NCBI RefSeq assembly: GCF_000143415.4
Contig: NW_003314329.1
Coordinates: forward strand, 931,763 to 995,762
DNA length: 64,000 bases
Direction of reading: 5' to 3'
From: Selaginella moellendorffii
Taxonomy: Eukaryota > Plantae > Lycopodiophyta
Within the stretch, counting starts at the first letter, position 1, and each line of letters opens with the position of its first letter. The position numbers and the translations under genes are program-made. The notes under the pieces are model-generated. The model was not told the DNA's origin and ran no database searches. It was given only the letters and a program-made list of their open reading frames with translations. Below are positions 1-64,000 of this stretch, piece by piece.

Positions 1-3000
1 GGCATCCACCACGATGTTACTCTTCCTAGGCTTGTATAGAATCTCACAATCAAACTCAGCCAAAGCATTGACCCGTTGACCTTGTTTCCCTCTCAGATCG
101 GGCTGTGACAAGAAGTGTTTCGTTGCCACATTATTCGTGTAAACCTTGAAGTGTCTCCCAAGGTAGTGTCGCCACTCCTTGAGCGCCTTGACCACTGCAT
201 ACAATTCCTTCTCGTGGGCAGGCCACTTCTGTTGAGCCTTGTCCAACTTCTTTGAGAAGAACGCTACTGGATGGTTGTCTTGCTTCAAAATTGCGCCTAA
301 CACAAAGTCTGAAGCATCCATTTCTACCTCAAAGTCCTTACCAAAGTTTGGTAATGCCAACACGGGAGCCTTCCTCAACTTCTCTTTGAGGTGGACAAAT
401 GCCACTTCGCATTCTGCTGTTCATACCATCTTCCCTTTTCCCATTTGGTCCATTAAGGGCAGAGCTACTCTTGAATAGTGTCTGATAAACTTCTGGTAAT
501 AGTTGCATAGCCCCAACAATGCCCTTAACTTGTGTACATTTGATGGTCGCTCCCAATCCTGGATCGCTTGGACCTTCTCAGGGTCCACTTTAAGCCCGTC
601 CTTGCCCACCACATGCCCGAGAAACTTTACCTCTTGTTGAGCAAAGTTATATTTGCTCTCTTTAGCATACAGCTGATGTTCCCTTAGTTTCTCAAACACC
701 TTTATTAAGTGTTCGACATGCTCCTCTAGTGTTTCGCTATAGATCAAGATGTCGTCAATATAGATGACCATAAAGTGATCCAGATAGGGTACAAAGATGT
801 GGTTCATCAACGCCGAAGACATTGCTGGTGCATTGCATAGCCCAAAGGGCATCACCAGAAACTCAAAGCTCCCATACCTTGTTTAACAAATTGTCTTCTT
901 GACATCTTCCTCTGCTACCCTGATCTTGTAGTATCCTGACCTTAGGTCAATACTCGAGAAGTATTTTGCCTTTCCCAACCTATTGAACAGTTCCTCAATC
1001 CTTGGCAAAGGGTATTTGTTCTTCTTTGTATACTTGTTGAGCAACCGGTAGTCTATGCATATGCGCATAGATCCATCTTTTTTTTTCACAAATAACACCA
1101 GTGCCCCATATGGCAACTTGCTCAACCTAACATACCCTTTGTTCACCAACTCCTCTAGTTGGCGCTTGAGCTCCTCAATTCCTTTTCGTTCAAATGATAG
1201 CGGGGACGAACCACCGCCTCAGCACCCTCGACCAGCTCAATCTTATGTTCTATCGATCGTGCGGGGGCCAATCCCGCCGATAGCTCCTCTGGCATGGTAT
1301 CCTAGAATTGGTCCAACACCTGCTGGATCACTAAAGATACTTCTTCCATTCCCATTTTTTTGTCACTCTTCACCGAGAGTAAGCACAAAAATGCTACCTT
1401 GGTTCCTTTAGTGAGTTTTCCTCTTGTAGACACCAGGTTTAGGTAGGAATCTTTGGCCTTGCATTGCCCTACCTTTAGATCTTGGGCCTCTACCTTTAGA
1501 TCTTGGGCCTCCACCTTGGATCTTCTTCCTTGGGCATTCGCTAGTACCATAAGGTTCTTACTTTGTCCATGCAGGGCTACCATGAACCAATTGAACTAAT
1601 CCAACCCGAAGATTACGTCAAATCCCGCCATGTCCAACACGGTGAAATCCATGTCTACTTTCCATGTCCCTACTTCGACTCTCGCTTGTCGAAGTACCTC
1701 ATCGGTGCTATAGCTGCCTTGAACAAACTCTATAGTCCTTGGTTCGCCCAGCCGCTACACCGTTAGTCCGGCTTGCCGGACTATGTCTGCAGCCACAAAA
1801 TTATCCGAAGCACCCGTGTCAATAAAGATCTTAACAAAGCTACCTCCGAGCTTCCCTCGGAGGGATAGTAGATGTCGCGAACGACTCTCTACCAAAGTTG
1901 CTCGTGTAATGAGTAACTTTGAGTTAGGGACTGGATCATATACCTCAGTTTGGATTTCACCGAACTTAATGGCCATATTGGCTCTAGCCTTCTCCGGGTA
2001 GGGACATTCCCTCGAGAAGTGTCCCCCTTCACCACAGTTGTAGCATACGTTGTTTCCCATGCTGCTAACCGACTTGCCCTTCTTATCCGTGGGTTTGTCT
2101 CTTTTTGCTTGACTCCCCCACATGCTCGCTCGCTGGCCACCGGATCTACCTTTTCGGAACCCTGAGGACTCATTATTAGAGAAATTGTTTTTGAATTTGC
2201 CTTTGCTATATGTTCCCCTTAGTTTGGCCCCTTTGCTAAATGTGGACCCCGACCCTGTCGCGTTCCCCTTTCGCAGGTTATCGTTGAAATGCACCTTGAT
2301 AGCCGCATCCAACGCTTCTTTTTAATTGGTCGGGTTCCAACGCATCACCTCGTTGCCAGCCCAGGTTTGCAAGCCTAATATGGAGGCATAGAACGCATCC
2401 ATATCACTCATATTCGTTACCAATATCCTCTTTGCCATAAATCCATTCACATACTCTTGAATGGTTCCGGTCTGCTTCAGCTTACTCAGCTCATCCCTTA
2501 GGTGCAGAGTAGCATTTGGAGGAACGTATGTCGCGCGGATCCTTGCCTTTATCATTTCCCAAGTGGCCACCGGTCCTTCGTTGGCCTCCGTCGTTCTCCA
2601 CCAAGACTTGGCATTATCTGCCAAGTATGGTTTTGCACAAAGGACCTTCTCTGAGCTCGGTAACCACAACGCTCGAAAGTAGTCGTCCATATCATAAAAC
2701 CAATCCTCCACCACCTTATAGTCGTTCACTCCCTTGAAGACTGGTGGGGGCTTTGGTTTGTACTTAGGAACTGCCTGAGGGACTGATTCCAATTTGGTCT
2801 GTTTGACCTTGTTTAGTTCAGCCTCAATCCCTACCGAAGGGTCCGCACCTTTTGCGCTACCAACATCTGCAGTCTTTCACTTTTTCTTCTGCTTCTCCTC
2901 ACGCTTCAACTTGCATACGAGAGTCTCCAATAGGGCATTGGTCTGTGCCAATTGTCCTTTTAGAATGTCCAATCGAGCCTTGGACGACCAAACCTCGCCA

Positions 3001-3885
3001 CCAGACTCCTGTTTGGAAGTTTCCTCACTGTCCTCATGCAAAGATTCCTCATCTATAGCCTTTTGTTCGACCAGAGGCTCCAGCTCTGGTAGAGGTTCTG
3101 TCTCCACCTTGGTTCGTTTTCACTCTGCCTTTGTCATCTCCCAGCAATTCACCTCTATCCTTCGCTAAAACTGAGGAAAATCCTCCAATACCATATCTAT
3201 CCGATTAACACTGCCTTGGCTTTTGCTAAGTTCCTTTGCCAAGGTTCCCACCTATTGTACCAGCTCCTACTTGGTCCTACTTGGTTTCAGCTACTCACTA
3301 CATGAGCAATGGAGCATTAGCCATCCATCCACGGATTCCCAAATCTCTCCCAATCCCCCTCCCCGGGTTAGACTGGATTTAAGGTTCGGCTACACTCCCC
3401 GTAGGCACAAGCAACCAAGCACACCAAGCCTCCAAGTTTTTAACATCCCTTGGTACAACAAGACTTGATCATGGGACCTTCTAAATCCCAAGCCTTGGGT
3501 GCAACACTTGCTTCAGGACACCAGGGAGAAACACCGTGGCCTAACGGCCCAGTATGGGTACCTCTACCCCCCCACTTCTATCCCAAAGGAAAGGCTCAAG
3601 CCCCTAAGAAGGGCGAGGACCAATGAGCCACAAGGTACTCAAGTGGGGCACCACTCCACATGAGCTGGGAGCACCGCAGTCGGTTTCCCTTTCGGGAGTG
3701 GGAGCTGCTCTTGAGCACTTCCCTGGGTGGCCATTCCGGCACCACCCAAGCCCATGCTCACTCCCACCCAAGGCCCCTCGGCCCCAATCTCAACCTCAAG
3801 TCAGTTTGGAAGCACCACTGGAGAGTTCCTTCAAAACTAGTTCTTGGACCTCACTATCCCTACTATACTTTTGGAACCCCCTGCA
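1..3885 (-). mobile_element. Ty3/gypsy LTR retrotransposon family A, copy 1 (defective; 3' part lies outside the window; 5' LTR truncated)
   Basis: Minus-strand fragments in gypsy order: gag (2322-2792), CCHC knuckle CYNCGEGGHFSREC, protease IFIDTGASDNF (1755-2312), RT (883-1149; 421-855 with YIDDILIYS), RNase H (~1-400). Degenerate PBS near 3182-3193. LTR sequence ~3194-3885 matches the LTRs at 14717 and 22896. Several stops. Confidence 0.95.
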
Positions 3886-3915
3886 AGAAACGAACTATAC
3901 TTTTGGAACCCTGAG

Positions 3916-6272
3916 TGAAACGAACAACAGAGCAAACCCTAGGCCAACCTCCCAACCCTTAAGGCATTACAGCCACAGGGCATAGAATATTCTTGGAATA
4001 TTCCTGTGGTTCGTGTCATTTTCCCCTACCTCATGACCGAGTCACATACGGCAGCCTTGAGAAGTTAAACGAGCCTCACATGACGGGAGTCCAAGGCAAT
4101 ACAGCCATGGAAAAAAAAAGTGCAAACAGCAACACCAACCTTGCGACAAACAATCATGAAAGAAAGAAAGCATTACGGCTTTCTTACATGACAATACGGT
4201 CATGAAAACAAGAGAATGACAATAGAACAAATGGCTCAAATTATATAGCAATACGGCTATAGAACTCAATTTTCCCCTTCCTCAGGAATGTCATCCAAGT
4301 CATAATTAAAACTCGGAAACACTCTCTTCATGTCATCCTCAGTTTCCCATGTAGCTTTGTCCATAGAATAACTATTCCATTGAAGTAACAACTCCTTAGT
4401 TGTTTTCCGGCGTGTTTTCACCAATCTTTGAGCAAGAATATTGGCCGAACCAATCTTCTCTGCATCAATCTCATGCTGAATGCCACATTCAGGAGCCAAA
4501 CCATCAAGTAACTCATCCGGAAATACGTCACAGAACTCCTCCTGAATGGAATCCACCCTAGCCCCATGCCCACGAACGCACTGCAAATCAGACATGATTA
4601 TATTAGAAAGAAACAGGTACACCACAAAAGAATTAGCTATCTCATGCATGCATGTCACCAACTCGAAAGTGTTAATCAATGGAGTATCACTATTTTCTGT
4701 CCCGACAATCTCTTTTATAGTGCCACCAACTTCAATACGCAGAACATTACGCTCCCAATCGATCCCTGGCTTCCTGTCATAAAACCATTCATTCCCAAGA
4801 ATAACGTCTATGCAACCAAGATCCATAACCTGGAACGAAGGATGGTCGAGAATCCCCTGAATTGTCAAAGGAACACTTGAAGCCCATTCACCGTAAACAT
4901 GAGTGCTATGTCCATCTGCCATAACCACCTTGTAGATTACTAAACTATTTTTTCATAGGCAAACCAAGTTTCTTCACCACCTTGGAGCTCAAAAAGTTGT
5001 GTGTAGCACCTGGATCGAAAAGAATATTAACAGCATTACCCTAAATGTCCCCCTTGGCCTTCACAAGTTGATTGTGCATAGAACCATTAATCTTGACAAA
5101 GTTGATACGAACTTGAGAGTTAGATTCTTGAATTTTTGCCATAGGGTGTGGAAAAGCCACCACAGCAGATGCCTAAGTTGTATCCACAAGAGATTCCACC
5201 ACATTCACCTTAGCATTCTTTGATCCCTTTACAAGAGGACAATCCTTGCCATGATGTCCAACCTTATGACAACGAAAGCAATTGCCCTCCACTTTGTCCT
5301 TTTCTCATTGGTCTAACTGATGTCTTTTTGCCTCATTACCATCTCCACTCTTCGAACTAGGACAAAACAATGGCTGTTTCTTCCCTGAAGATGAAGTATT
5401 GGTAGGTGAGTCATCATGTTGACCAAGTTGACCGATAGTTTGGGTGAAAAGATTTGAGCCTTAGTGATAGCATCAGTCAATGTTGCTGGAAAATCCTTCT
5501 TGACCTTCTACTACACATCCACTGAGCTCAATCCTTTGATGAAATATTGCACCTTTAACAGCTCATTATAAGTGCCCATGAGACTAAGGCAAAGATCACA
5601 GAACTTGCAAGCATACGCATCCAAAGACAAAGTCCCCTGCCAGATCTCTAACAACTGGTTCACGAGATCAACCTCTTAAAACTTCTTGACAAACGAAGCG
5701 CGGAAAACCTTTGTCAAATTAGTCCAAGAAGTCGGCTTCGGATTAGCTTTGATGTAGTTCTTCCACCACGAAGAAGCATGGCCCGTAAACTCCATCACAA
5801 AGAAATCTATCTTCACCTTATCCTCACAAGGATTGTGAGACAAATAACTTTCCCACAATTCCAACCAAGAATCAACCTCTTGACTATCACAAACATTCGG
5901 TGATGATTTTCGTTCCATGATACTATAATCTTTAGCATGTTTGATGTACCAATGGTAATCACGGAATTGATTCAACCCTTGAGGGTCCATGTGAAGGAAG
6001 AAATCCTTAATGAGATTGACAGAATCCTTAACCTCCTTTATGTCGCTCTGAACCTCAGAAATCTGGCGTCAGGAATAAAAGCCAAATTCAAACTTACAAG
6101 AGACTTAGGCTTATAGCTATACATCGCCATAAATGGAAACATGCCAATAGTCGATTAATGAGTGTTATTGTGAACAAATTGAAGCAAAGGCAAATACTTC
6201 TCCCATACTCCCTATTGAGTCAAATCCCACAGGCTATAGAATATTCTCAGAATATTCCTGTGGTTCGTGTCA
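3916..6272 (-). mobile_element. Chromodomain-bearing gypsy family B, internally deleted copy B1 (gag, protease and chromodomain only)
   Basis: 3' LTR at 3916-4018 is the reverse complement of the family B LTR, with an adjacent PPT. Partial 5' LTR at ~6223-6272. gag at 5676-5990, CCHC knuckle near 5240-5290, protease ILFDPGATHNF near 5000-5030. ORF 4266-4928 fuses pre-RT 'GIQHEID' directly to the chromodomain 'AEK...ELLLQWNSYSMDKATWE'. Confidence 0.9.
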
Positions 6273-6279
6273 GTGACAG

Positions 6280-7496
6280 TCTATGTTTGATTGCATCTCA
6301 GAGTGCCATAGAACTCAGCACTCACGCACCAGGGGCAAATTGTGGCAGCAAAATTGACCTCGGGCAAAAACACCGGCCAAGGATCTCATGTGCTAGATGA
6401 ATCTATTGCCCAGAATGACAGGACATTCCATGGGTTCCCCTTCCGGCAGTGAATACCAGAGGGAAGAGATCTTTGATTTCATGCCGGATGAAGACGTGGT
6501 GCATGGAAGGCAATGACGTCAGCCACCAAGGCTTCGTCACCCTCATGAAGAACAGCTTCGGTCAAATCCCGAAGAAAAATCCAGTACCGTGGATCCTCGC
6601 ATTTGCGAGAATGGGCATTTTGATAAGGCGGTTCACGAGATCCTGCGCAAGACCATTGTCTACTGGATAGCTCTCACGCAAGTTTCAACTTGAGCGCCAC
6701 CAAGAGCATGTTTCAGAGCATGAAGATGCACACCTTGGTTTCCTGGACGACCAACGCTCAAAACGCTTGAAGGACAAAATCAGGAGTCAGAACCATACTC
6801 AGGTGGTTCAATCCCTTTCGAAAGCTTCCACAGTCAGACCGTTTGCTTCTACATCCCAAAGAAACCAGGGGATACCTCCAAACAATTCAAACACCATTTC
6901 AGCAGCATTCACTCTCTGCATTATCTCTTTGGCTTCTTCTGATCCACTCTTGTAGTCTGTCACGCGTTTCCTCCAGGAAGACACAAGAGCATCGTACTCG
7001 TGCTTTTCCCACGCAGGCAGATAGCGAGTGAACGTTGTCCGCTTGGCTTTTCTGACATTGAACTCGTCTGGTGATGAAGCAGCAACAAGGGTTTTATTTC
7101 CAACCATCCGCCCCAAGTCCACTCACTGATCGATGAGATGGTAATCTACTTTGCTGTCCAGCACAATCTCCTGAGGGAAGTCTTCTCTATTCACCACCCT
7201 GAGCTTGTCACCCTCGAACATCAAAACAGTTGCTCTGGATTCGTAGATCATGACCGGAAGTACCAGAGGAATGCAGATTTACCAACCCCTGAATTTCCAT
7301 TCAAATGGCAGCACAACATCCACATGAACGGCACCAGGATCTTCCTGATCTCTTTGTACAACCCATCGAATATCTCCTTCACGTACAGCTTCAGAATATT
7401 GCTGTGGAATGTGGTCAGACGAGCACCTTGAGCAAGAAATTTCAGCCGTTCCAGTGATCCACCATGCCTGCTGAGATCTCCTAACATAGACTGCAT
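6280..7496 (-). pseudogene. Crinkler (CRN)/RHS-type P-loop NTPase gene fragment
   Basis: Minus-strand translation gives 'LYVKEIFDGLYKEI...GNSGVGKSAFLWYF' (Walker A), 'TLVAASSP', 'YLPAWEKHE' and 'FELFGGIPWFL'. This motif order is typical of CRN-effector NTPase domains. Frameshifted and flanked by TE sequence; boundaries approximate. Confidence 0.6.
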
Positions 7497-8164
7497 GTTC
7501 CCACAGGAGGCAAAGAATATTTACGTTTTAATTGAAAAGCATTTAACTCAAGCGTTACAATGAGCAGACCTTGCTATCCAATAAGAGCACAACTCCTTAA
7601 AATGGACATTCCAACAATGGCCTAATCTTCATTATTGAGCTTAGATTGTAAAAGATTGTAACCGAGCTTAGTCTTTGTACTGTGGGTTCCTTGTAAAAGA
7701 TTGTAATTAGAAGCTCTATTAGCTAAAAGAGTGATGGAAGCACAAGGAATCCAATCACAGTGGAGTTCTTCAGGCTACTTTAGCACACGACAATGACATC
7801 CTCAATGTTAACAATCCACCTTGTGTGTACTAGTGCTCCACGATCGGGCAAGTCTCCACATAGGTTCATGATTTGGCGAGGAGCCCCACGTAGCTACATG
7901 TTATGTCTAGCATTCTTGAGGCCAGTTTCGTCCTTCTAGGTGGTACATCCTGACAAAGAACTTTTCTAATTTCGGAAGTGAATGTGATCTAGTCGGGAGC
8001 CATTCCTTCCAAGACCATGTCCTGGTAGAGGATCAAATTAAAGCGTGGAAGAAATTCCCAGTGAGAGTGTAGGCCTAGCAGTCCATGCGACAATGTTGTG
8101 GCACTTGGGCATTTGATCGAACATTGCCCGTGCCATGTGTGTGCCGTTTTGAGTGTAGAACTCA

Positions 8165-8400
8165 TGCTTTTCCACGGTATGTATGGTTCTTCTCGTGCTC
8201 ATTTTGCTTATACTCTTGTCCAGATTGCTTCATTCCTCATAGATGTATTTTCCAAGATAAATGGAGGCCTGTAGTTCATCAACATCCAAGGCATGGAGTG
8301 ACCACAATGCAACTTGTGATGAGATGAGTTTGTGACCTGGTACACTTTTGTGTTATGCCATCTGCTCTTTGGAAACTTTTGAGAAAGCTTGCTCTCAGCT
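8165..8400. repeat. Dispersed ~230 bp repeat, copy 1 (gene-fragment-like)
   Basis: 'gctttt.c..ggtatgtatggttcttctc.tgctcatt.tgcttatactcttgtccag...tgagtttgtgacctggta.acttttgtgttatgcca...ggaaacttttgagaaagcttgctc' recurs at ~26425-26650. Confidence 0.8.
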
Positions 8401-9596
8401 GATTGAGTTTGAGCTCGGTCAAGGCTCTCACAAGATTGGACAATAGTGTGAAAGACAGATGATGGCCATACTTTCGGCACCCAACAAGCTTAACTTTCTA
8501 GTTGCACCAAGATTACCACCAATTCCATGAGGTGTGACTTATTTATGTTTCCGTGGACAGGATCCATTGCCACCTTGAGGAAGCTCGTGAAGTTGATTGC
8601 ATTGAGATTACCCCCAGACTGCAATTGTCCAGAGTCTAAAATAGCTTGGTCGATTCTGGGCTGGAAACGCTTCGGAAGCGATCATGTTGGAGAGGTATCG
8701 ATTCGGCCAATAGCTGCTCTCCAGGATCCGCGCGTGGATCCTTCAAATCTCTGGCCTCGCAGCCCCTGGATGTCGTCCACGTGGACAGTCAGATGGATTC
8801 CAAATCTTCCTTTGCATTCAAATTCAATAAAAGGTGCTGAAACTATTTTTTATTATCTTCCAGTGTTCATGGCTTTGTGGTTAACTTTCAATTAAGAATA
8901 ATGCGGTCTTAGGGTAGCCCCCTAAACATGAACACTATTTTATTATTTTATTATTAAATTAACTGTGTTGAGTTTCAGGTACCATTTTATTATTTTATAG
9001 TGGCTCTCCTCAAAATTTCACCTAAGATTAACTGTGTTGAGTTTCTGGGTGTTAAGTTGGTACTAGATCATGGTAAAGAAGCCAAACCAAACTTGTAATC
9101 AATGGAATCCATTCTTACAGACTTAAACAAACAGATCATTAAAAAGTATTAACTTAGGTGCATCTCCACTGTAGTCATGCAATAAAATTTTGTGGAAGGG
9201 AAGATATATATTTGATTTGCTCCAGCAGCACACAAACAGCACAAACATGCCATTGAGCTTACCAATTCGATCATATATACCAAATTCTCATCAGTTGTCA
9301 CTTCAGCATAATTGATCAATCATACACAATGTTGTGCCATTGAATTCTTGATGACCCTGCCAGCATATGCAAGGTTTCCTCACCATTTGAACAAGAAAGA
9401 TGCTAGACAACAAGCTAGAAATGAACTTTTAAACGCAGTTTATATTAGTGGTAACTACAAACAAATAAAAGGTTAAGAGAGATACATCACAGCCGTTGGA
9501 TTAAAGGATATCTTAGAATATACCATCCAAACTGTTAGATTTTAGCGCTGCTACGGTTTCGCATGACCTGTGCTGGTTCCGGGGGCGAGGTGAGAG

Positions 9597-12500
9597 TGAC
9601 ACGAACCATGGGAATATTCCAAGAATATTCCATGGCCTGTGGGATTACTGTGGGATTTAAGGTTAGGAGGTTGGCCTAGGGTTTGCTCTCTTGTTCGTTT
9701 CATTGGTATCAGAGCAGCACGTTCTTTTGGGGATGGCAGGTGAGCAAGACATTGATCTTGATGAGGAGTATGGTGTTAGTGATGATAGCCATGAAGATGC
9801 GAAAGAGACTCTTGATGATGTCGTTGTGCGGCAGGGACGCCAAATTTTTGAGGTTCAGAGCTACATAAAGGAGGTTAAGGATTCCATTAATCTCATTAAG
9901 GATTTCTTGCTTCGCATGAACCCTCAAGGGTTGAATCAATCTCATGTCTGTGATTACCATTGGTACATCAAGCATGCCAAGGATTATGGTATCGTGGAAT
10001 GGAAATCATCACTGGATGTTTGTGATAGTCAAGAGGTTGATTCTTGGTTGGAATTGTGGGAAAGCTGTTGGTCTCACAATCCTTGTGAGGATAAGTTGAA
10101 GATAGATTTCTTTGTGACGAAGCTTACGGACCATGCGTCTTCATGGTGGAAGAACTACATCAAAGCTAATCCGAAGCCGACTTCTTGGACTAATTTGACA
10201 AAGGTGTTCCACGCTTCGTTTGTCAAGAAGTTGATCTTGTGAATCAGTTGTTAGAGATCCGGCAAGGGACTTTGTCTTTGGATGTGTATGCCTGCAAGTT
10301 TCGTGATCTTTGCCTTAGTCTCATAGGCACCTATATTGAGCTACTAAAGGTGCAATGTTTCATCAAAGGATTAAGCTCGGTGGATGTGCAGTAGAAGGTC
10401 AAGAAGGATTTTCCAGCAACATTGACTGATGCTATCACTAAGGCTTAGATCTTTTCGCCCGAACCGTCAGTCAACTTGGTCAACTCTGGTCAACGAGATG
10501 GTCTACGGAGTAGTCAACGTGATGACCAGCTCGCCAATGCTTCATATTCGGGGAAGAAACAACCGTTGTTCTGTTATGGCTCAAAGCATGAAGATGGTAG
10601 TGAGGCTAGAAAACTTCGTTTGGACCAGTGAGAGAAAGACAAGGTGGAGGGCAATTGTTTTCGTTGCCATAGAGCTGGATATCAGAGCAAGGATTGTTCT
10701 AAAGGGGTTAGTGAATGATAAGGTGACTGTGGTGGAAATTATAGGCAATGATGTGAGTGATAGTGCTTTTGGGGCTGTATTGCTTCAAGTTAGGCATTCT
10801 CTCGCATTCATGAGCCACAAGTTTGATGCCACACAACAGAATTGACCTACTTAAGAATGGCAACATTCTCTATATGAATCGGACTTCCATGTAGATTCAG
10901 ATCATCAGTCTCTCCAGATCTGGATCTTCGAGGCCACCTTGCTCGTTGGCAAGAGTTCCTGCAGGAAATGTCTGTTAAGATCTGGTACAAACATGGAGGT
11001 GACAATAAGGTGGTTGATGCATTATCCAGGATGGTAAATTTTATCTCGTTCGTGAAGCTATCCAGCGATCTCTTGGATGAGCTTAAGGAGTTTGCTGACT
11101 TCAACTCCTTTATCACTGATATTCGCGCGAAGGTTTTGTTGAGGGACGCCTCTACAGATTTGAAGGGTGACAAGTTTGTGTCAATCGAAATACGAGATGG
11201 AATCCTAGTGAAGAAGGGACGTGTAGTGGTTCCTCGTGTTGACAAACTCATCAAACGGATTTTGGTTGAGTTTCATGATGTGCCAAGTGCTGGGCATCCG
11301 GTGGTATTGAGAATGTATATGTTGGTGAAGAGGCATTTCTTTTGGCCTAGGATGAAGTCAGATGTTGAGAAGTACGTACGTGGTTGTTTGACCTGCCAGG
11401 TGGTCAAAGTTGATCATCAAAAGCTCGCTGGCCTCTATCATCCTTTACGTGTACTCAAGAATAAGTGGGATAGCATCTTGATAGACTTTATCACTGGTTT
11501 GCCCAAAACCTTTCAAGGAAATGATGCTATTTGGGTTGTTGTGGATCGTTTGACGAAGATGGCTCACTTCTTCCCTATGAAGTCAACGATAAAAGCTTCT
11601 AAACTTGCTCAGTTGTTTGTAGACTGGTTATTCAGTCTCTATAGTTTGCCGGGTGACATTGTGAGTGATCGGGATCTTAGGTTCACGTCCAAGTTTTGGC
11701 AAACAGTCTTTGAGAAAATAGAGACTAAACTAAGCATGAGTAGTGGTGAGCATCCACAATCTGATGGGCAGAAAGAGCTCATGAATCAACTATTAGAAGA
11801 TATGCTACAGTCTTTTGTGGGAAACTTGACTTGACAAGGAGTATGGGAGAAATACTTGCTTTTACTTCAGTTTGCTCACAATAGCGCTCATCAATCGGCT
11901 ATTGGCATGTCTCCTTTTATGGCGACGTATGGCTATAAGCCTAGGTCTCCTGTGAGTTTGAATTTGGCTTTGGTTCGAGTTCCTCATGCTTGTGATTTCC
12001 TGGAGGATATGCAAGACAAGCTTGAGTTGGCAAAATTGAACATGAGGCAAGCTCAAGAATGAGACAAAAGATTGGCTGATGAGCATCATCGTCATCAAGA
12101 GTACAAAGTTGGTGACAAGGTTTTTTTTAAACTGTCGGATGCATAACGGTCTTTAAAAGGAGGTGGCAATGCTAAGTTGTCTCCACGGTATTGTGGACCT
12201 TGGACAATTTTACAGTGTGTAGGGGATCTTGCGTACACTTTGCACTTGCCAGTTAGTTTGAAGATTCATCCAACGTTCCATGTGGGCAAGCTTAAAGTGT
12301 GTTTGCACTCTGGTGATATCGTGGATCAGTCCATCATCCAGGTTCCAGAGATTGATGCAGAGAAGGCTGGTCCGGCCAATATTCTTGCTCAAAGATTGGT
12401 GAAAACATGCCGGAAAACAACTAGGGAGTTGTTAGTTCAGTGGAATGGTTATTCCATGGACAAAGATATATGGGAAACTGAGGATGACATGAAGAGAGTG

Positions 12501-56176: not shown

Positions 56177-58066
56177 TCAAATTTGACAGAAGTTCAGGGT
56201 GGAAAGACAGGAACTATCGTCTTCGGTTTTGGTTACATGGTCGGACAAACGAGACGAGGAATAAGACGAGGAAGACGAAGACGAAGAAGCAGCATTTCTA
56301 GCAGGGCCGAGATGGAGACCAGAAAGTAGAGTATAAGGCGCAGCATTTGTGGGATCGAGCTCGTAGACGTACTCCGCAGCCTTCCTGGCCCTGTGAGAAT
56401 CACCAGCAGCAGTGGAAGCACTGAGAAGCGACGTCCAGGCCACAGCATCCGGCTCAAAAGGCATGGTGGCGATGAGATCTTCGGCCTCTCTGAGCCTTCC
56501 AGATCTCGCCAGAGCATCGACGACGCACATATAGTGATCCAAGCTCGCAGCTATGGCGTAGTCCGCCGAGAGGGACGCAAAGTGGGAGTAGACGTCGCTG
56601 AGAAGGCCGGCGTGAGCACAGGCCAGAAGAACGCTCACAAAGGTGACGGAGTTTGGAGTGAAGCCGTGGAGCTGCATGGCGTGGAAGATCTCGAGAGCTT
56701 CGTGGCTATGGCCGTTTAGAGCAAAGGCCGCGAGCATGGAGCTCCAGGCTTTGACGTCGCGGTGCTTAAGATCGTCAAACACGAGCTTGGCCTCGCGGAG
56801 GTGGCCAAAGTTTCCATACATCGCTACCAGTGCCGTCTTGATCGCAAAGTGGGCGATCCATCCTCTCCCCTCGTCGGTGAGAATGGAGTGGACGATCCTT
56901 CCCTCGGCGACGCTGGAGCACGAATCGATGATGGCGGTGAAGGTGACGCTGTCGGGAGCGATTCCTTCGAGATCCATGGCGCGGAAGAGATCAAGAGCCT
57001 CGCGGCGGCGATGCCCGGACTGGGCATACGCGGTGATGATCGAGTTCCACGCGACGACGTTGTTATTCTTTCGCGGGATCTTGTCGAAGAGCTGGCGCGC
57101 CGCGTGGAGATCGCCGGCGCGGGCGTAGGTTGTGACCATCGTCGTCCACGAGACGCTGGATCGCAGCCTGGGAGGAGTGTTCTCGAAGAACTCGCGCGCC
57201 TGGGAGGGAGAGTGATTAATCGCATAGGCCGCGAGCATCGCTGCCCATAGCACGGCGTCGCCGCCAGCGCCATCGATCCCAGTGGCGCGATCGAAAGCCC
57301 GCCTCGCGTCCTCGATCTTGCCCAGTCTGCCATACATCTCCACCAGCGCGGTGGAGATCGTGATCTCTCCCTGGAATCCGGCCGTGAGGAGCTCGGCGTG
57401 GATCCACATCCCCAGCCCCATCGCTAGCGACTGACCGCAAGCGTCGAGGATCGCGACGAAGGTCACGCGATCCGGGCGAGCGCCCTCGAGGTCCATCGCG
57501 CGGAAGAGCCCCAGCGCTCGCGCAAAATCCCCTTCTCTGGCAAATGCGCAGATCATCGCGTTCCAAGAGACTGTGTTCCTCTCGGGCATTTGATCGAAGA
57601 GAAGCTTTGCTCGATCGATGCGATTGCTCTTGGCGTAGGCGACGAGCATCGCGGTCCACGACGCTACGTCCCTCCTGGGCATCCCCGAGAAGAATTTCTC
57701 CGCGCGATCGAGATGCCCGCTCTGGGAGAGGATCGAGAGCATGATGTTCCAGGAGAATTGGTTCCTGGGATCCATCCGGTGGAAGAATTCGCTGGCGTCC
57801 TCGATCGAGCACTTGCCATACATCTGGAGCACGAGATTGGAGAGGAACTCGTCGCCGCGCAGCCGGCCGTGCTTGATCATCTGGGCGTGGATCCGGCGGC
57901 CATGGGAGAGCGCCCGCGCGGATCCACACCGCCGGAGCAATGATCCATACGTGACGCTGTCCGAGGAAGACGATGAGGATTCTAGGGATCTCACTGCCCT
58001 CTCGAGCTGCTCTAGGACTAGCGCTGGATCGTCGCTCTTGCTCGCGTGGAGGAGGAACTGCGCCAT
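56177..58066 (-). CDS. PLS-class pentatricopeptide repeat protein with E domain, no DYW
   Basis: Intronless 629-aa ORF with repeated VSWNAMI/PDRVTF/ALVEMYG motifs. HYMCVVDALARSGRLREAEDLIATMPFEPDAVAWTSLL and E-motif AAPYTLLS, then a Ser-rich tail. Confidence 0.93.
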   Translation of the reverse strand: MAQFLLHASKSDDPALVLEQLERAVRSLESSSSSSDSVTYGSLLRRCGSARALSHGRRIHAQMIKHGRLRGDEFLSNLVLQMYGKCSIEDASEFFHRMDPRNQFSWNIMLSILSQSGHLDRAEKFFSGMPRRDVASWTAMLVAYAKSNRIDRAKLLFDQMPERNTVSWNAMICAFAREGDFARALGLFRAMDLEGARPDRVTFVAILDACGQSLAMGLGMWIHAELLTAGFQGEITISTALVEMYGRLGKIEDARRAFDRATGIDGAGGDAVLWAAMLAAYAINHSPSQAREFFENTPPRLRSSVSWTTMVTTYARAGDLHAARQLFDKIPRKNNNVVAWNSIITAYAQSGHRRREALDLFRAMDLEGIAPDSVTFTAIIDSCSSVAEGRIVHSILTDEGRGWIAHFAIKTALVAMYGNFGHLREAKLVFDDLKHRDVKAWSSMLAAFALNGHSHEALEIFHAMQLHGFTPNSVTFVSVLLACAHAGLLSDVYSHFASLSADYAIAASLDHYMCVVDALARSGRLREAEDLIATMPFEPDAVAWTSLLSASTAAGDSHRARKAAEYVYELDPTNAAPYTLLSGLHLGPARNAASSSSSSSSYSSSRLSDHVTKTEDDSSCLSTLNFCQI

Positions 58067-58221
58067 GCCGCGCGGCGTACTGCCAAGTAACGGTATCTTA
58101 CCGCGCGGTATGGCGGGCTAACTGACACTCAAAGCAATCCAATGTGGATGACCCGCGCATTTCTCTTTTTTGAAAAAAGTGCCCTATTAGAAATGGGGAA
58201 TTAGGGTTTCAATCTCCGGCG

Positions 58222-61200
58222 ATGGAGGCCGAGAGAGAGAGGCGCTTGAGCCGGCGGATCTCCGGCATTGTCATCGCCGCGGCCAAGGCGGTGTCCAAGC
58301 TCACCGAGGGGTAAGATCACAGCTCCAGCGGCGCTGCATTCTCTGTGCTTGTTGTGTGCTTATCAGGCAGAAAGATCCAGAGGAGGACCCGGATTTCGTC
58401 GCGAGGAATCCTCAGTGGGAGCCGGAATTGCCGCCGATCCATGGCGTGCGGCGGCCGACGGATGCGAAGGCGCAATCTACTGCTGCGCTGCTTGCGGCAC
58501 TTGACGAGCTCCCTCCCATTGCGATCGATTCGGCCGCCAAGCAAAACTGGAAGAAGGCTTACAAGACAGTGAAGAGGATTTTGGTAAGTCACTCCACCCA
58601 CCTGTGTAGTGTAAAGCTTTTCACTTTCGTTTCTTCACAGATTGTGAGAAGGAAGGCAATGCGTAGTGCTCTTGGAACTGGAGCTCAGATGGAAGGACAT
58701 GCGCTGGGGGTGTGGAGTCCCTATAGCACGGCGCGTTTGAAGCTCTTTATGATGCTCTACAACCAGTAATCATTCTAGCGCTGAAGTTTTTGCTTCAAAG
58801 TTCTCACTACTGTGCCAGGAAAGCGGAGTATGTCGTTCTTTGCTTGATCATATCACACCTCTTGGTGCTCATCTTCCAAGGATCATCCCAAGAACAATGG
58901 ACTCACGTCCGGAAGTTCGACCTCGACTTTGCCGATGCGACGCTTACTCTGTTCTACACGTAAGTATATTCCAAGATCTAAGAGGTATTTTAGCATTGAC
59001 ATTCTTTTTTGTCTCAGCATTGAGATGATTCTTCGGATCCTCTGTCTTGGCTTTATCAGAGGTCCTAACACATACCTGCGGGATCCATACAATAGGCTCG
59101 ATTTTGTCATCGTGATTGATTCCTGGTAAGTCGGTCTTTCGTGTTTTCTATACTGAAGGTCTTAAAGTTTAGGGTCCATATTGGTGTAAGAAGTGTGACT
59201 GGAAGCGAGTTCTTTGCACGCATTGCGATTCTTCGTGCATTTCGAGCCCTGTTAGTTTTGAAGCATTTCACGTTCTTCGCTGATGTCATAGTATGTTCTC
59301 TGAGGTTATGTTCCCATAACAACGTATGACGAAAGTGTGAATCACTTGCTAGGCTATCATGTCTGCAGTTGGAAGGAGCATTGTTCCTCTTGAGAACGTC
59401 ATTTACTTGACACTGTTCATTATCGTCTTCTATGCGCTCCTTGGTATTGAGTTTCTCGAGGAAACTTTAGATCAACGGTATGTATAAACGAGCCTTTTTC
59501 TGTAGACTAAAGCGTTTTGCTACTCATCCAGGTGCATTCGAACGACAGATAACCAGTTGGCCTATCCAGAGCGGTTTTGTGATGCGAAGAAAGTGACGGA
59601 TGGGTACAAGTGCCCGAGCTCACAAAGTCAGAAATGTCTGGTAAGGAGTTGATCTTTATCATCGAAACAGTAGGTAGTTTTCCTTAAATGTTTACTCTTG
59701 CAGTGCAGGTGTCCGGTAATCCCAACTGGGGATCTACAAACTTTGATCAGTTCCACTATGCCCTGCTCACTATGTTTCAGGTTCTCATTTGACAATTTTG
59801 TGTCTTTTAAAATTGTTCTGACGGTCGCTGCTTGTTTCAAGGTCATATCCTTGGAAGGTTGGAGTCTCTTAATGTACAGCATCAAGGATGCCGAAGCTGC
59901 GCAAGCAGGTGCTGCTTCTAATGTTTCTTCTTCTTGTTGACTCCTCAAGTCTCTTGGATGCAGATGCATATTTTATGACTTTAGTCGTTTTTGGCACATA
60001 CTTGCTTATTAATGTTTTCATTGCTGGTATAAGTGGAGTGTTCCTTCGAGTGAGGGCTGAACATCAGGCAAGAACTTTATCTCTCTGAATTCTATATGTT
60101 TTGTGTTTTCTTTTTCCAGATGCTGCTAAAGAAAAGCCGCCAACCGAACCAAGTTACTTTCTACAACGCAACGGTAATGGCAAATGTTCTCAAAGACGAC
60201 ATTATTAAGGACGATGAGAGGAACAAGAGATGGCACATCCGTTTCATAAACAGATCAAAGAAAATGCACCGGGACGTCATTCGTGCTGTAAGTCGTACTC
60301 GGTCGTCCGTGAAGGCGGCCTTTCAGGCCACCTCGTTCAGGTTCAGTAGACAGTTCTCCATGGCTGGGGGTAGCCGGCGGTTTTCACGAACTTACTCACG
60401 GGCGCTGAGTCGTAGTGTGACCATGGGTATGAGAGCAGCAATGGACTTGTCGCATAAGTCCCGTGCAATTGTTGAAAATCCAAACTTCAACCGGGGGGTG
60501 CTATTGGCGGTCACTATAAACATCATCATTTTGTGCCTGTACAAATATGGGATGTCGAACGATTTACTCTATACTCTTTGTACGTCTGATGGTTTTTCTT
60601 TCTGGAATTTCTTTCTGACGTCCTTAACATGGTGACAGATGCTATTCAAGCGGTGCTGCTTGTTATATTTGCCGCAGAGATGGTTTTGCGATTTCTTGCG
60701 TATGGACCTAGGCCATTTATTGCAGACAGTGAGTACTTACTGTTTATCTTGTCCTTCACTGAACATGCCTGTCTTTATCAGAAATGAACGTGTTCGATGT
60801 TTTCGTGATCTCCGTGTCTGCTGGGGCTTTGGTTTCAAGAGCTTATCCCAATATCTCTTCAGTTCGGGTTTTGCGATGGTTTTACTTGTCGAAAAAGTAT
60901 GTGGATAAACATCCAAGTACAGTGGTAAGGCTCGTGTACACAGTTTTTTTTTTTTTTTTTCCTGCTCTTACTTTTCTTTTAACTGACTTTAACTTCTCCC
61001 AGGCCACATGTATAAAAAGTGTGGGCTCTCTTGTTAGTGTTTTTTTCTTCTACCTCCTTGTTATTACAATTTGCTCCATTATCAGCATGGAACTGTACAG
61101 TGGTCAATACTATAACTTTCCGGACGGTTATCCCAGGGGAAATCATGACTCCATGCTGCAGACTATGCTTTTATGGTTTACCGTCACAACAGGTGAATCC

Positions 61201-64000
61201 TGGGTCAACCAAATGTGGAACTCTATGAGACCCGGAGTGAAATATAAGTAAGTAAATACTACTATGGTTTTTTCTCTCTGACACGAAGTAATGGTTTTTC
61301 TTTCACAGTTGGCTGGCGCCCTTTCTCTATGTATTATACTACTGCATGACAACTTATGTTATCTTAAATCTTATTATTGCCGTCATCCTGGAGAGGAGCG
61401 AACTTACTGACAACCAAAAAAAACAGATACAACGAGTAAGTACCTGGTTTAATAAAAACTTCTGTCGATGATATTTTTCTCTTTCAGGTAGAACATATGA
61501 AACTACTGAGGCGGATGCATAGCAGGGCTTATATACGAAGCGGAAGCTGGGTTGTAGACGCTGTGGAAGGAGCCCAGGCCGGTTTCAAAAAGGTGGCATC
61601 TCGGGTTTTAAGCATGAATGTGAGGGCATTGAAAGACGGTAGCAGACGGGATGAACGAGAAAGAAGACGAACAAGGGATGGAGGATCTGAACCAGCCAGT
61701 AGTGGACAGTCGGAGCTTCCAGGGGCAGTTTCTGAGCAGCCAGCAGGCAATACAAGCGTCACATTACAGCCCTCAACATCTGCTGCTGCAGAAAAATCCC
61801 GCACCAGTTCTGAAGCAACATCAGAGAAGTTGCATCGCCGCTCTTCTCAAGTTATTCAAACGTCCGGCTTTCCAACCGATATTGGCGAAAGGCGGGAGTC
61901 GAGAACTGCACTAGAGAGCGCAGTTCTCACGCTTGCAACAATGACCAAGCCACCTGTCGTAAGGGCTCCAAGCAGAATGGACAGGAGGCTGAGCCGGAAA
62001 ATGAGTAGAACCGCCAGCAAAAGACAGTCGTTTCAGCTAGCTGAGTACGAGGAGCTTGAGAAGAGCATTGCAACTTTAGAGAGGCCGTGGTACTTGCAAG
62101 AAGGGTCACTTCTTCTGTTTGGACAAGGAAACGCCGTCAGGAACTTGTGCCAGCTAGTTGTGGGAAGTGTTTGGTGGTGGTGGTTCTCAATGTTTTGGGC
62201 TGTTATCAGCGTGTGGACTGTGGTCGAGATGAAGCCGAATGGCGATCCCCTCGTTCTCAAGTCCTTCCTGCCTGTACTGCACAACCTCGTGTTTGTGGTA
62301 AGCATCTCAGTTCCATGCTCTGATTTCTTATGCTATGTGATTGGAACAGGTATTCTTCGCGGAGCTTCTCATGAGAGTTATCTCTCAAGGCCTGATCTTC
62401 ACTCCCGACGCCTACATGGGGGACTTTTACAACCTGATCGACGTTTTTATACTTATCATCGACGCACTTAACATGAAAACTACGTGGAGCGAGAATTCAG
62501 CAAGGCCTATTCACGCTCTGCTTGCGCTCCGGCCGTTTCGATTCGTGTGTCGACTCACCGGGTTGAAGAGTTTATTCGGTAATCTAGTGAGTACCTGTCC
62601 GGCGATTGCGTCAGTTTTGCTATTCACTTTCACCATCTTTGCAATCTTCGGCTCTATCGCTATTCAACTCTTTCGTGGCCACCTTTACTCTTGTAACGAC
62701 ACTAATGTGAGTCACCGAGCCTACTGCACGGGCTATTACATCAACAAAGTCTCGCTTATGGCTCCTCGTGCATGGACCAATCCTACGTTCCACTTCGATG
62801 ACATTGGCAACGCTCTTCTCACCCTGTTTATCACGTCTAGCTTCGACAATTGGGTTGGAAACTGGTTATATCCGGTCATGGACATTGCTCCCGAGAATCA
62901 TCAGCCCCGCCGAAACCACAGCCCGGTTTACGCTCTTTTCATGGTGGCCTTTGTCTGCGCTGGAGGTTTTTTTATAATGCGAGTTTTCGTGGGAGTGTTC
63001 ATCAACGAGTTTGGAGTTAGATCCGGTTCCAAGCTTCTGACAGAACGGCAGAAGCTCTGGAGGGACATGAACCGTATAATTCAGAAGATGAGACAGAGAC
63101 CGGTGCCGCGGCCGCAGAAAGATCCCATCAGGAAGTTTTGCTATCATTTGGTCCATCATAAGTACTATCCCCACGGTATGGTAATCGTCATTCTTAGTTA
63201 CTGCGCATTTCTGGCCTCTCATGTTGCCAACCAGACCAAGGCAACCTCCAGAAGCCGGCAGAAACTTCATTGTTTCTACACAACTCTCTTCTTGGTAGAG
63301 ATGTTGCTGAAGATAATTGGTAATGAGGTGAGTACAATCAACAACAAACTCTCGGCTACTCTTCTAACTTCTTTCTTTTTCTTTTTCGGTGAGTGCAGTT
63401 TAGCGTTTACAAACATGACCACGCTAGTCATTTGGAAGCTGCGCTCTCCTTGACAGCTGCTGCGTGTTTGTTGCCTAAGAAAGGCTCGCCTCGTCAAACT
63501 ATAGGCCGCGTTGCATACAGCTTGCGGCTTTTTTGCCTTATTCCTCACATTCCAAGGGCCCGGGTGCTGATAAACACTATAATCGTCTGCTTCCCAAGCA
63601 TGGCAGAGATCATGGCTCTTCTCATGATCTGCCTCTTCGCGTTCTCGGGCATTGGCTTTCAAATGTTTAGCCAAGTGAAGGATGGAGTTTGCATTGGGCC
63701 TGCCATCAACTTCAGGAGCTTTGTAAACTCGTTCATCACCGTATTTCAGGTGCACAATGTTTTCACAAGTTGGCACAGATTAACTCTGTAGTCTTACAGG
63801 TGACAACTGCTGATAACTGGTCTTGCATTATGGGCGATGTTATGGTGGCGCCGCCATACTGCACGAAAGGTTCGTCGCTAATGGCAAACGACTGCGGTTT
63901 TCCTGTAGCGGGCGTTGTCTACTTTGTGGCGCTCATCGTCGTGGCAAACAACATATTCATGAACTTGTTCGTGGCTATTATCTTGGACGTGATCACTTTC
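58222..64000 (+). CDS. Four-domain (4x6TM) voltage-gated-type cation channel alpha subunit (Cav/Nav/NALCN superfamily); 3' end outside the window
   Basis: DI: YLRDPYNRLDFVIV, RAFRAL, GNPNWGSTNFD...FQ|VISLEGW. DII: NVFDVFVI, PRGNHDS...TTGESW. DIII: ALRPFR, FRGHLYSCND, FHFDDIGNALLTLFITSSFDNW. DIV: INFRSFVNSFITVFQ|VTTADNW, NDCG, FMNLFVAIILD. Many short introns. Confidence 0.93.

What the first reader, a model, noticed from the sequence alone, without database searches (positions are those of the whole stretch)
58222..64000. Four-domain voltage-gated-type channel with an EEDD selectivity filter in a land-plant gene neighbourhood
Seen: four homologous 6TM repeats in one intron-containing gene with no stop or frameshift noticed. 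Pore residues are E (LEGW, codon 59854), E (TGESW, 61195), D (SFDNW, 62845) and D (TADNW, 63812), giving EEDD. Established: EEDD is the T-type (Cav3) Ca2+ filter signature; 4-domain channels occur in animals and green algae but not in angiosperms such as Arabidopsis. Inference: this is a retained ancestral Ca2+ channel in a seed-free plant, plausibly acting in flagellated-sperm motility or chemotaxis. Related genes may already be reported in bryophytes, so novelty needs checking.
Basis: partly seen in the sequence, partly recalled or inferred. Interest (0 to 1): 0.85.

Follow-up and report, generated by a model that had tools for sequence, protein, structure and literature searches.

The report
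Four-domain EEDD cation channel gene, Selaginella
This is a real, selected gene for an animal-style four-repeat calcium-type channel in a lycophyte, from an old green-plant family found so far only in land plants with swimming sperm. It is not a T-type channel, and the public RNA examined shows mainly splice forms that break its first repeat.

Summary
Positions 58222-64000 (+) hold 20 exons of one gene with 47-78 bp introns.

Spliced RNA contigs from four studies confirm 15 listed joints; three more rest on piece ends, depth and a loose end. Single contigs span all four repeats, so it is not two 2-domain genes. Variants between runs give 26 synonymous to 10 non-synonymous changes, so it is not a pseudogene.

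Homologs with EEDD occur in Marchantia, Sphagnum, Diphasiastrum and Selaginella paralogs. Ceratopteris reads EDDD; the Adiantum and Ginkgo fragments cover only two pores. These sequences form one clade, sister to prasinophyte green-algal channels (EEDE). Joining this clade to Cav3 is rejected (AU p=0.001), so EEDD here is not T-type ancestry. S4 charges are reduced.

All four RNA sets skip the conserved IS4 exon, and at least three use an acceptor 5 nt upstream. This breaks the frame in repeat I.

A sperm role is untested. Brunet & Arendt (2016) noted a putative moss Nav/Cav and the link to flagella, while later reviews still call land plants devoid of such channels. The scan also flagged this stretch in another window and a paralog elsewhere in this genome.

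The parts
58222..64000 (+). Four-domain channel gene, exons 1-20 (aa 1-1560 of 1736); it continues beyond the window. Exons: 58222-58310, 58367-58583, 58641-58765, 58819-58959, 59018-59125, 59173-59290, 59353-59477, 59532-59640, 59709-59780, 59842-59908, 59964-60067, 60120-60579, 60639-60728, 60782-60924, 61003-61247, 61309-61435, 61488-62297, 62350-63327, 63399-63749, 63800-64000
   Evidence: Model with no stop; identical to P0211; joints in RNA contigs
58823..60052 (+). Repeat I (S1-S6, aa 146-420); pore LEGW, filter Glu codon 59854-59856
   Evidence: Pfam best stretch 147-421; coordinates
59173..59290 (+). Exon 6 (118 nt), encoding IS4 (FARIAILRAFRALLVLK). It is conserved from Marchantia to Selaginella but absent from all RNA contigs laid (joint 59125|59353); skipping it shifts the frame
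59704..59708 (+). Tandem acceptors TTGCAG|TGCAG|G. The frame-keeping acceptor gives an exon start at 59709. The RNA contigs start at 59704 (+5 nt), which creates the MSVQ... 1396-aa ORF from ATG 59634
   Evidence: Depth bins of X1 and X18 and the X5 loose end; ORF scan; public isoform P0213/P0214
60068..60119 (+). GC-AG intron (donor GCAAGA), removed in all four runs
   Evidence: joint 60064>60117 with 3 ambiguous letters
60492..61393 (+). Repeat II (aa 550-766); pore TGESW, filter Glu codon 61195-61197; S4 one turn shorter than in animal channels
62172..63012 (+). Repeat III (aa 1009-1271); pore SFDNW, filter Asp codon 62845-62847
63013..63144 (+). III-IV linker, nearly invariant among land-plant homologs (LLTERQKLWRDMNRIIQK...PRP)
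   Evidence: Invariant columns 1271-1295 in alignment A1
63172..64000 (+). Repeat IV (aa 1325-1560, cut by the window end in S6); pore TADNW, filter Asp codon 63812-63814; only two in-register S4 arginines

Best explanation
Shown: this is the pore-forming subunit gene of a four-repeat (4 x 6TM) cation channel in what is very probably Selaginella moellendorffii. It belongs to a green-lineage clade distinct from animal Cav1/2/3, Nav, NALCN and fungal Cch1. That clade was inherited vertically from algae into land plants and is under purifying selection. Inferred: the four P-loops place a Glu-Glu-Asp-Asp carboxylate ring in the pore, conserved in the liverwort, moss and lycophyte sequences read in full, so the channel most likely conducts Ca2+ or is at least divalent-permeable. 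A C-terminal EF-hand-like region and IQ motif suggest calmodulin feedback. The S4 segments keep only about 2-4 in-register basic residues, so voltage dependence is probably weak or shifted. Shown: in the four public RNA sets laid, the assembled mRNAs skip the IS4 exon, and in at least three they use a +5 acceptor. These forms cannot encode the full channel. The full-length frame is nevertheless conserved and selected, so I infer the complete protein is made only in some cell type or condition not captured there. The male gametophyte is one candidate.
For: Gene model and identity to P0211. Four Ion_trans repeats plus IQ; IQ at 1681 and no AID motif. Spliced single contigs spanning all repeats in four studies. 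26 synonymous versus 10 non-synonymous variants, pN/pS about 0.11, with 6 of 7 variants upstream of 59634 synonymous. EEDD in Selaginella paralogs, Diphasiastrum, Sphagnum and Marchantia. Land plants monophyletic with species-like branching, sister to a clade holding Bathycoccus and Prasinoderma. Cav3 kinship rejected. Whole-protein PDB scores nearly equal for Cav2, Cav3 and Cav1 (349, 339, 331 bits), lower for Nav and NALCN. IS4 exon peptide conserved down to Marchantia. Paralogs are named Selaginella moellendorffii, and the protein sits on two scaffolds as two alleles.
Against: No electrophysiology exists, so ion selectivity is inferred from four residues. S4 charges are reduced, most of all in repeat IV of this copy, so it may not be voltage-gated. 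No RNA contig contains exon 6 in any of the four runs, so a full-length mRNA is not shown here. Contigs drop rare variants, and the tissues of the runs are unknown. Three further loci in the same genome could make this copy dispensable.
Confidence: 0.8

Rival explanations
1. It is a plant ortholog of animal T-type (Cav3) channels, with EEDD inherited from a common Cav3-like ancestor, and it gates at low voltage like them.
For: The EEDD ring is identical to the Cav3 rows. Repeat III alone scores best against Cav3.2 and Cav3.3 in the PDB.
Against: Trees place the green clade across a split with support 100 from Cav3. The AU test rejects the union (dlnL 195, p 0.001). The repeat II pore scores best against Cav2 and the repeat IV S4-P region best against Nav. 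An IQ motif is present. The III-IV linker differs from the Cav3 linker in the alignment.
Confidence: 0.03
2. It works like NALCN/Cch1: a weakly voltage-sensitive, partner-dependent leak or stimulus-operated cation channel rather than a depolarisation-gated Ca2+ channel.
For: S4 segments have lost several gating charges. In the unrooted trees the green clade is not inside the Cav/Nav assemblage and meets Cch1/NALCN-like sequences at the same deep node.
Against: It is not nested in NALCN/Cch1, which is its own clade with support 100. The filter is EEDD, not the NEEE, EEEE or EKEE seen in those rows. PDB scores are lowest for NALCN. No partner genes were examined.
Confidence: 0.2
3. This copy is decaying. 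Redundancy with paralogs has let splicing of repeat I fail, and the locus is on its way to being a pseudogene.
For: All four RNA sets skip the IS4 exon, and at least three use a frame-breaking acceptor. IVS4 of this copy is the most degenerate among the plant sequences. Three further loci exist.
Against: There is no stop in 1736 codons on either allele. pN/pS is about 0.11, and this includes repeat-I exons upstream of the break. The exon-6 peptide is conserved.
Confidence: 0.08
4. The N-terminally truncated products (1468 or 1396 aa, lacking the first voltage sensor or all of S1-S5 of repeat I) are the functional proteins.
For: These ORFs match the assembled transcripts, and both exist as public predicted isoforms.
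Against: They lie behind long upstream ORFs of 245 and 111 aa. The upstream exons show synonymous-biased variation, as expected only if they are translated. A pore lacking S5 of repeat I is unlikely to fold, which is an inference.
Confidence: 0.06

Closest known systems
Prasinophyte green-algal four-domain channels (Bathycoccus prasinos CAL6339629.1 cluster, Prasinoderma coloniale PRCOL_00001059, marine metagenome relatives)
   Same: Sister clade with support 100. About 32-33% identity over repeats III-IV. Same pattern of reduced IS4 charges. E, E and D at filter positions I-III.
   Different: Filter position IV is Glu (EEDE) rather than Asp. They come from unicellular algae, some of which I recall as lacking flagella (from memory). 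No function is known for either clade.
Animal T-type channels (Cav3.1-3.3)
   Same: Identical EEDD filter ring. Repeat III is the best PDB match (3e-52). Four-repeat architecture.
   Different: Not orthologous (AU p 0.001). The plant protein has an IQ motif and a different III-IV linker. Its S4 segments carry fewer charges.
Animal HVA Cav1/Cav2 and Nav channels
   Same: C-terminal EF-hand-like region and IQ motif. By eye and from memory, the III-IV linker motif (TE.Q...PRP) is like theirs. The repeat II pore is most like Cav2, and the repeat IV S4-P region most like Nav.
   Different: The filter is EEDD rather than EEEE or DEKA. There is no AID motif for a beta subunit. The phylogenetic position is outside that assemblage.
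NALCN / fungal Cch1
   Same: Depleted S4 charges. Deep branch outside Cav/Nav.
   Different: Separate clade and different filter residues. Lowest PDB similarity.
Putative Nav/Cav of Physcomitrella noted by Brunet & Arendt 2016 (PMC4685582, Fig. 6 legend)
   Same: Same idea: a four-domain channel kept in land plants with flagellate sperm and missing from seed plants.
   Different: That note rests on a reciprocal BLAST hit, with no sequence analysis. I did not recover a Physcomitrium protein here, so I could not test whether it belongs to this clade.

Membership tests
Four-domain voltage-gated-type cation channels (4 x 6TM) | Four Ion_trans repeats in one polypeptide | tested here: met
   Pfam PF00520, 4 stretches, E 6.6e-134 on P0062; exon pieces hit separately
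Four-domain voltage-gated-type cation channels (4 x 6TM) | One transcript covering all four repeats (not two 2-domain genes) | tested here: met
   Contigs of 8926 nt (X1) and 5039 nt (X18) span exons 1-20
Four-domain voltage-gated-type cation channels (4 x 6TM) | S4 segments with basic residues at every third position | tested here: inconclusive
   Present but depleted: about 3 in IS4, 2-4 in IIS4, 4 (one His) in IIIS4, 2 in IVS4
Cav3 / T-type | EEDD selectivity filter | tested here: met
   Filter columns E, E, D, D, the same as the Cav3 rows
Cav3 / T-type | Groups with Cav3 in a phylogeny | tested here: not met
   Split with support 100 between them; constrained tree rejected, p-AU 0.001
Cav3 / T-type | No C-terminal IQ motif (from my knowledge of the family) | tested here: not met
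   IQ motif at 1677-1692 and 1681 IQAAWRGHLVR
HVA Cav1/Cav2 | EEEE filter and an AID motif in the I-II linker | tested here: not met
   EEDD; no QQxExxLxGYxxWI or GYxxWI
NALCN / Cch1 | Nested in the NALCN/Cch1 clade, with a Lys- or Asn-containing or EEEE filter | tested here: not met
   Cch1 plus the NALCN-like row form their own clade with support 100, excluding the green clade; filters differ
Two-pore channels (TPC) | Two repeats per polypeptide | tested here: not met
   Four repeats; TPC2 hits only at 2e-5
Green-lineage four-domain clade (land plants plus prasinophytes) | Monophyly with named plant and green-algal sequences | tested here: met
   Support 100 for land plants and 100 for land plants plus the prasinophyte clade; names
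Flagellar or sperm Ca2+ channel (function) | Expression in spermatogenous cells or localisation to flagella | not testable with these tools
   Run tissues are coded and unknown; only the taxon distribution is suggestive

The most novel reading that the evidence does not exclude
A conserved EEDD four-domain channel clade, overlooked by reviews that declare land plants devoid of such channels, is the Ca2+ entry channel of swimming sperm (or of another excitable cell) in land plants with flagellate sperm, including Ginkgo. In Selaginella its production is gated by splicing: the IS4 exon and the in-frame acceptor would be used only in the cells that need the channel, while other tissues make frame-broken transcripts.
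Probability: 0.2. Interest if true: 0.8.

Novelty: new member of a known kind. Interest (0 to 1): 0.55.

Why it matters
Three channel-evolution papers read here (PMC5824947, PMC6259924, PMC11085791) state that land plants lack four-domain Cav/Nav-type channels. This gene and its relatives in liverwort, moss, lycophytes, ferns and Ginkgo show that statement is too broad.

They also point to a tractable candidate, Marchantia Mp2g23520. It could bear on two open questions: which channel lets Ca2+ into plant sperm during chemotaxis, and which channels carry Ca2+-dependent action potentials in bryophytes.

The clade gives a second, independent occurrence of the EEDD filter for studies of selectivity. 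The gain is moderate rather than large. The proteins are already in public annotation under automatic names, and the link to flagella was sketched in 2016.

Tried and rejected
I aligned with a faster MAFFT setting instead.
- treekit's AU test did not finish in two 300-s calls. A first manual IQ-TREE run failed on the thread count. The test was then done with LG+F+G4 and -fast searches, a simpler model than the one used for the tree.
- Searches for Mp2g23520, MARPO_0069s0001, XP_024536113 and Gb_09885 in papers found nothing, nor did several term combinations. Supplements and non-open papers are not covered. Edel et al. 2017 is not held.
- The Cycas sperm preprint, the Cycas genome paper and the spermatogenesis gene-distribution preprint do not mention such channels.
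- The ESM Atlas look-up gave only generic channel clusters.
- The word-indexed searches are leaky: Marchantia and Sphagnum were not re-found even with a profile containing them. The lack of Physcomitrium, hornwort, cycad, conifer or angiosperm hits is therefore weak evidence of absence.
- Contamination was considered and rejected. The introns are uniformly short. A PPR gene lies 155 bp upstream. Two allelic scaffolds exist. The gene tree follows plant phylogeny.
Full report
**What is in the sequence**

Translating 58100-64000 in three frames shows coding blocks that shift frame at short AT-rich gaps. Joining them at GT-AG sites gives 20 exons and a 4680-nt frame of 1560 codons without a stop. 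One donor is GC, at 60068. Introns are 47-78 bp and 38% GC against 48% for the exons. The frame runs off the window end inside IVS6.

Exon pieces hit Pfam Ion_trans separately. A search of 1.8 billion representatives with exon 18 returned a 1736-aa protein, P0062, at the same residue numbering. Its cluster mate P0211 is identical to my model over all 1560 residues. P0062 differs at 11 residues and sits on a second scaffold, so the two look like the two alleles of one locus.

Pfam on the full protein gives four Ion_trans stretches (E 6.6e-134) and an IQ motif at 1677-1692. In alignments they occupy the filter columns of Cav channels: E, E, D, D.

**Which organism**

Source names for the window's own protein are hidden. 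Its closest relatives, at 56-63% identity, are RefSeq proteins of Selaginella moellendorffii with automatic names such as 'sodium channel type 3/9-like', 'T-type alpha-1H' and 'L-type alpha-1F/1S-like'. In the tree the window protein nests with them at support 100.

The very short introns, the two allelic scaffolds and a PPR gene 155 bp upstream on the other strand fit what I recall of that genome. There appear to be four loci: this one, P0252/P0253, P0255 and P0257/P0063. The scan has also flagged one paralog on another piece (s1-344439).

**Transcripts**

Eleven of the listed runs hold half or more of the sampled words. I laid contigs of four runs from four studies on the 5779 bases.

- The contigs skip the predicted introns. 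Fifteen joints are listed, including the GC-AG intron. Three further junctions (59640|59704, 60579|60639, 60924|61003) are not in the listed table and are inferred from piece ends, bin depth and a loose end.
- Because the contigs are spliced, these runs are RNA.
- One contig of 8926 nt (X1) and one of 5039 nt (X18) cover exons 1 to 20. This refutes the idea of two separate 2-domain genes.

Two features differ from the full-length model.

- Exon 6 (59173-59290, 118 nt, the IS4 segment) is absent in all four runs. The joint is 59125|59353, and the bin depths leave no room for a second contig containing it.
- Exon 9 starts at 59704, not 59709. This follows from 130 rather than 125 covered bases in the bin for X1 and X18, and from an X5 loose end reading TGCAGGTGTC after 59640. 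The evidence for X7 is not decisive.

The net change is -113 nt, which matches the record coordinates of X18. Such a transcript carries three ORFs:

- a 245-aa ORF from ATG 58222 that stops at 59408;
- a 111-aa ORF from 59359;
- a long ORF from ATG 59634 that begins MSVQVSGNPNW.

That last ORF is exactly the public 1396-aa isoform P0213/P0214. A 1468-aa isoform, P0210/P0212, starts at MSAVGRS, meaning exon 6 is skipped with the in-frame acceptor. The RNA examined therefore supports truncated or unproductive forms. A full-length mRNA was not seen, although contigs drop rare variants.

**Is the full-length frame under selection?**

The 36 single-base differences between the runs and the window fall as 26 synonymous and 10 non-synonymous in my frame. 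That gives pN/pS of about 0.11. Six of the seven differences upstream of 59634 are third-position synonymous changes. With about 23% of sites synonymous, that has a probability of roughly 0.001 (my arithmetic).

The exon-6 peptide is also conserved from Marchantia (RDTFLRLAVLRLFRALLILRQ) to Selaginella. Repeat I, including IS4, is therefore maintained as coding sequence, and the locus is not a pseudogene. The simplest reconciliation is that productive splicing occurs in cells or conditions not dominant in these libraries. This is an inference.

**Relatives and phylogeny**

Named land-plant homologs:

- Marchantia polymorpha Mp2g23520, with isoforms up to 2039 aa;
- several Sphagnum species, mostly annotated as 319-aa fragments;
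- Diphasiastrum complanatum, two loci;
- Ceratopteris richardii, two genes;
- Adiantum nelumboides;
- Ginkgo biloba Gb_09885, a fragment.

At the Sphagnum fallax locus, tblastn with my model finds IIS6, the II-III linker and repeats III and IV in order around the annotated fragment. No angiosperm or conifer protein appeared in any search. The word-indexed searches are leaky, so this is only weak support for absence. It does agree with the literature.

EEDD is conserved in Selaginella, Diphasiastrum, Sphagnum and Marchantia. Ceratopteris reads EDDD. The Adiantum and Ginkgo fragments cover only pores II and III, reading D-D and E-D.

Two maximum-likelihood trees (LG+C20 PMSF, quick search) agree on these points:

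- Land plants form one clade at support 100. Vascular plants within it are a group at 96-99, and the Sphagnum/Marchantia fork is unresolved.
- The sister clade, also at 100, contains Bathycoccus prasinos, Prasinoderma coloniale and marine metagenome sequences. Its filter is EEDE.
- This green clade is separated by a split with support 100 from the assemblage of Cav1/2, Cav3, Nav, many protist channels and a Chlamydomonas incerta protein.
- Cch1 plus a NALCN-like sequence form a third group. Mesostigma branches nearby on a long branch.

The root is unknown. I therefore cannot say whether the green clade is closer to NALCN/Cch1 or to Cav/Nav. Forcing the green clade and Cav3 into one clade is rejected (dlnL 195, p-AU 0.001, LG+F+G4). 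Whole-protein PDB scores are almost level for Cav2, Cav3 and Cav1 and lower for Nav and NALCN. EEDD in plants and in T-type channels is therefore convergent or an old shared state. It is not evidence of T-type identity.

**How it probably works**

Shown features:

- four repeats, each with S5-P-S6;
- an acidic E-E-D-D ring;
- cysteine-rich turrets in repeats I and III;
- a nearly invariant III-IV linker;
- an IQ motif (IQAAWRGHLVR), preceded by a region that by eye resembles the EF-hand-like C-terminal domain of Nav/Cav;
- no beta-subunit AID motif.

Inferred behaviour: a pseudo-tetrameric pore whose carboxylate ring binds divalent cations, giving Ca2+ permeation, with calmodulin feedback at the C-terminus.

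The S4 segments are depleted of charge compared with animal channels.

- IS4 keeps three in-register basic residues.
- IIS4 is one turn shorter.
- IIIS4 has His and Leu at two Arg positions.
- IVS4 of this copy keeps only two Arg.

The bryophyte sequences keep more charges in IVS4. Gating may therefore be only weakly voltage-dependent, so a NALCN/Cch1-like mode is a serious rival.

**Function in the plant**

Every land plant in which I found the family has swimming sperm, including Ginkgo. It also fits Brunet & Arendt (2016), who reported a putative Nav/Cav in Physcomitrella by reciprocal BLAST and none in seed plants, and linked the loss to the loss of flagella (PMC4685582).

Two points weigh against a strict flagellar role. 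From my knowledge, which I did not test here, Bathycoccus and Prasinoderma in the algal sister clade lack flagella. And transcripts, albeit frame-broken ones, are assembled in RNA sets from several studies whose tissues I cannot see. The sperm role remains untested.

**Novelty**

The proteins are in public databases under automatic names, and the 2016 note anticipates the distribution argument. Three later papers state that embryophytes lack four-domain channels (PMC5824947; PMC6259924; PMC11085791). None of my ten literature searches found a description of this clade, its EEDD ring, its prasinophyte sister group or the splicing pattern. I rate it a new member of a known kind, with moderate interest.

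Noticed in passing
window 56177-58066 (-): Intronless, GC-rich 629-aa PPR protein gene lying head-to-head with the channel gene, with only 155 bp between the two start codons. The 8926-nt RNA contig of run X1 extends about 3.2 kb upstream of the channel ATG, so the two divergent transcripts probably overlap or were merged by the assembler.
   Followed up: partly
window 59702-59709: Tandem acceptors 5 nt apart (TTGCAG|TGCAG|G). The upstream, frame-breaking one is used in the assembled RNA, and it creates a new ATG-initiated ORF (ATG 59634) that reads into the repeat-I pore helix.
   Followed up: yes
L001 (Sphagnum fallax CM038195.1) 13-12390: The Sphagnum ortholog is annotated only as a 319-aa single-exon fragment, yet IIS6, the II-III linker and repeats III and IV lie in order around it, with a gap of about 7.9 kb before repeat III. 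Fragmented gene models like this may be one reason surveys missed the family in land plants.
   Followed up: partly
proteins P0252/P0253, P0255, P0257/P0063 (other Selaginella scaffolds): Selaginella has about four loci of this family, while a 2013 review notes that no TPC1 gene is annotated in its genome (PMC4844392). Whether the expansion compensates for a missing two-pore channel is an open thought, not tested.
   Followed up: no
run X6: One run labelled as a different organism (organism B) holds 58% of the sampled words of this gene, as much as the runs of organism A. It may be a mislabelled or mixed sample, or a very close relative.
   Followed up: no
window 60933-60972: A long T-run inside intron 14, where the reads tool reported that reads seem cut.
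   Followed up: no
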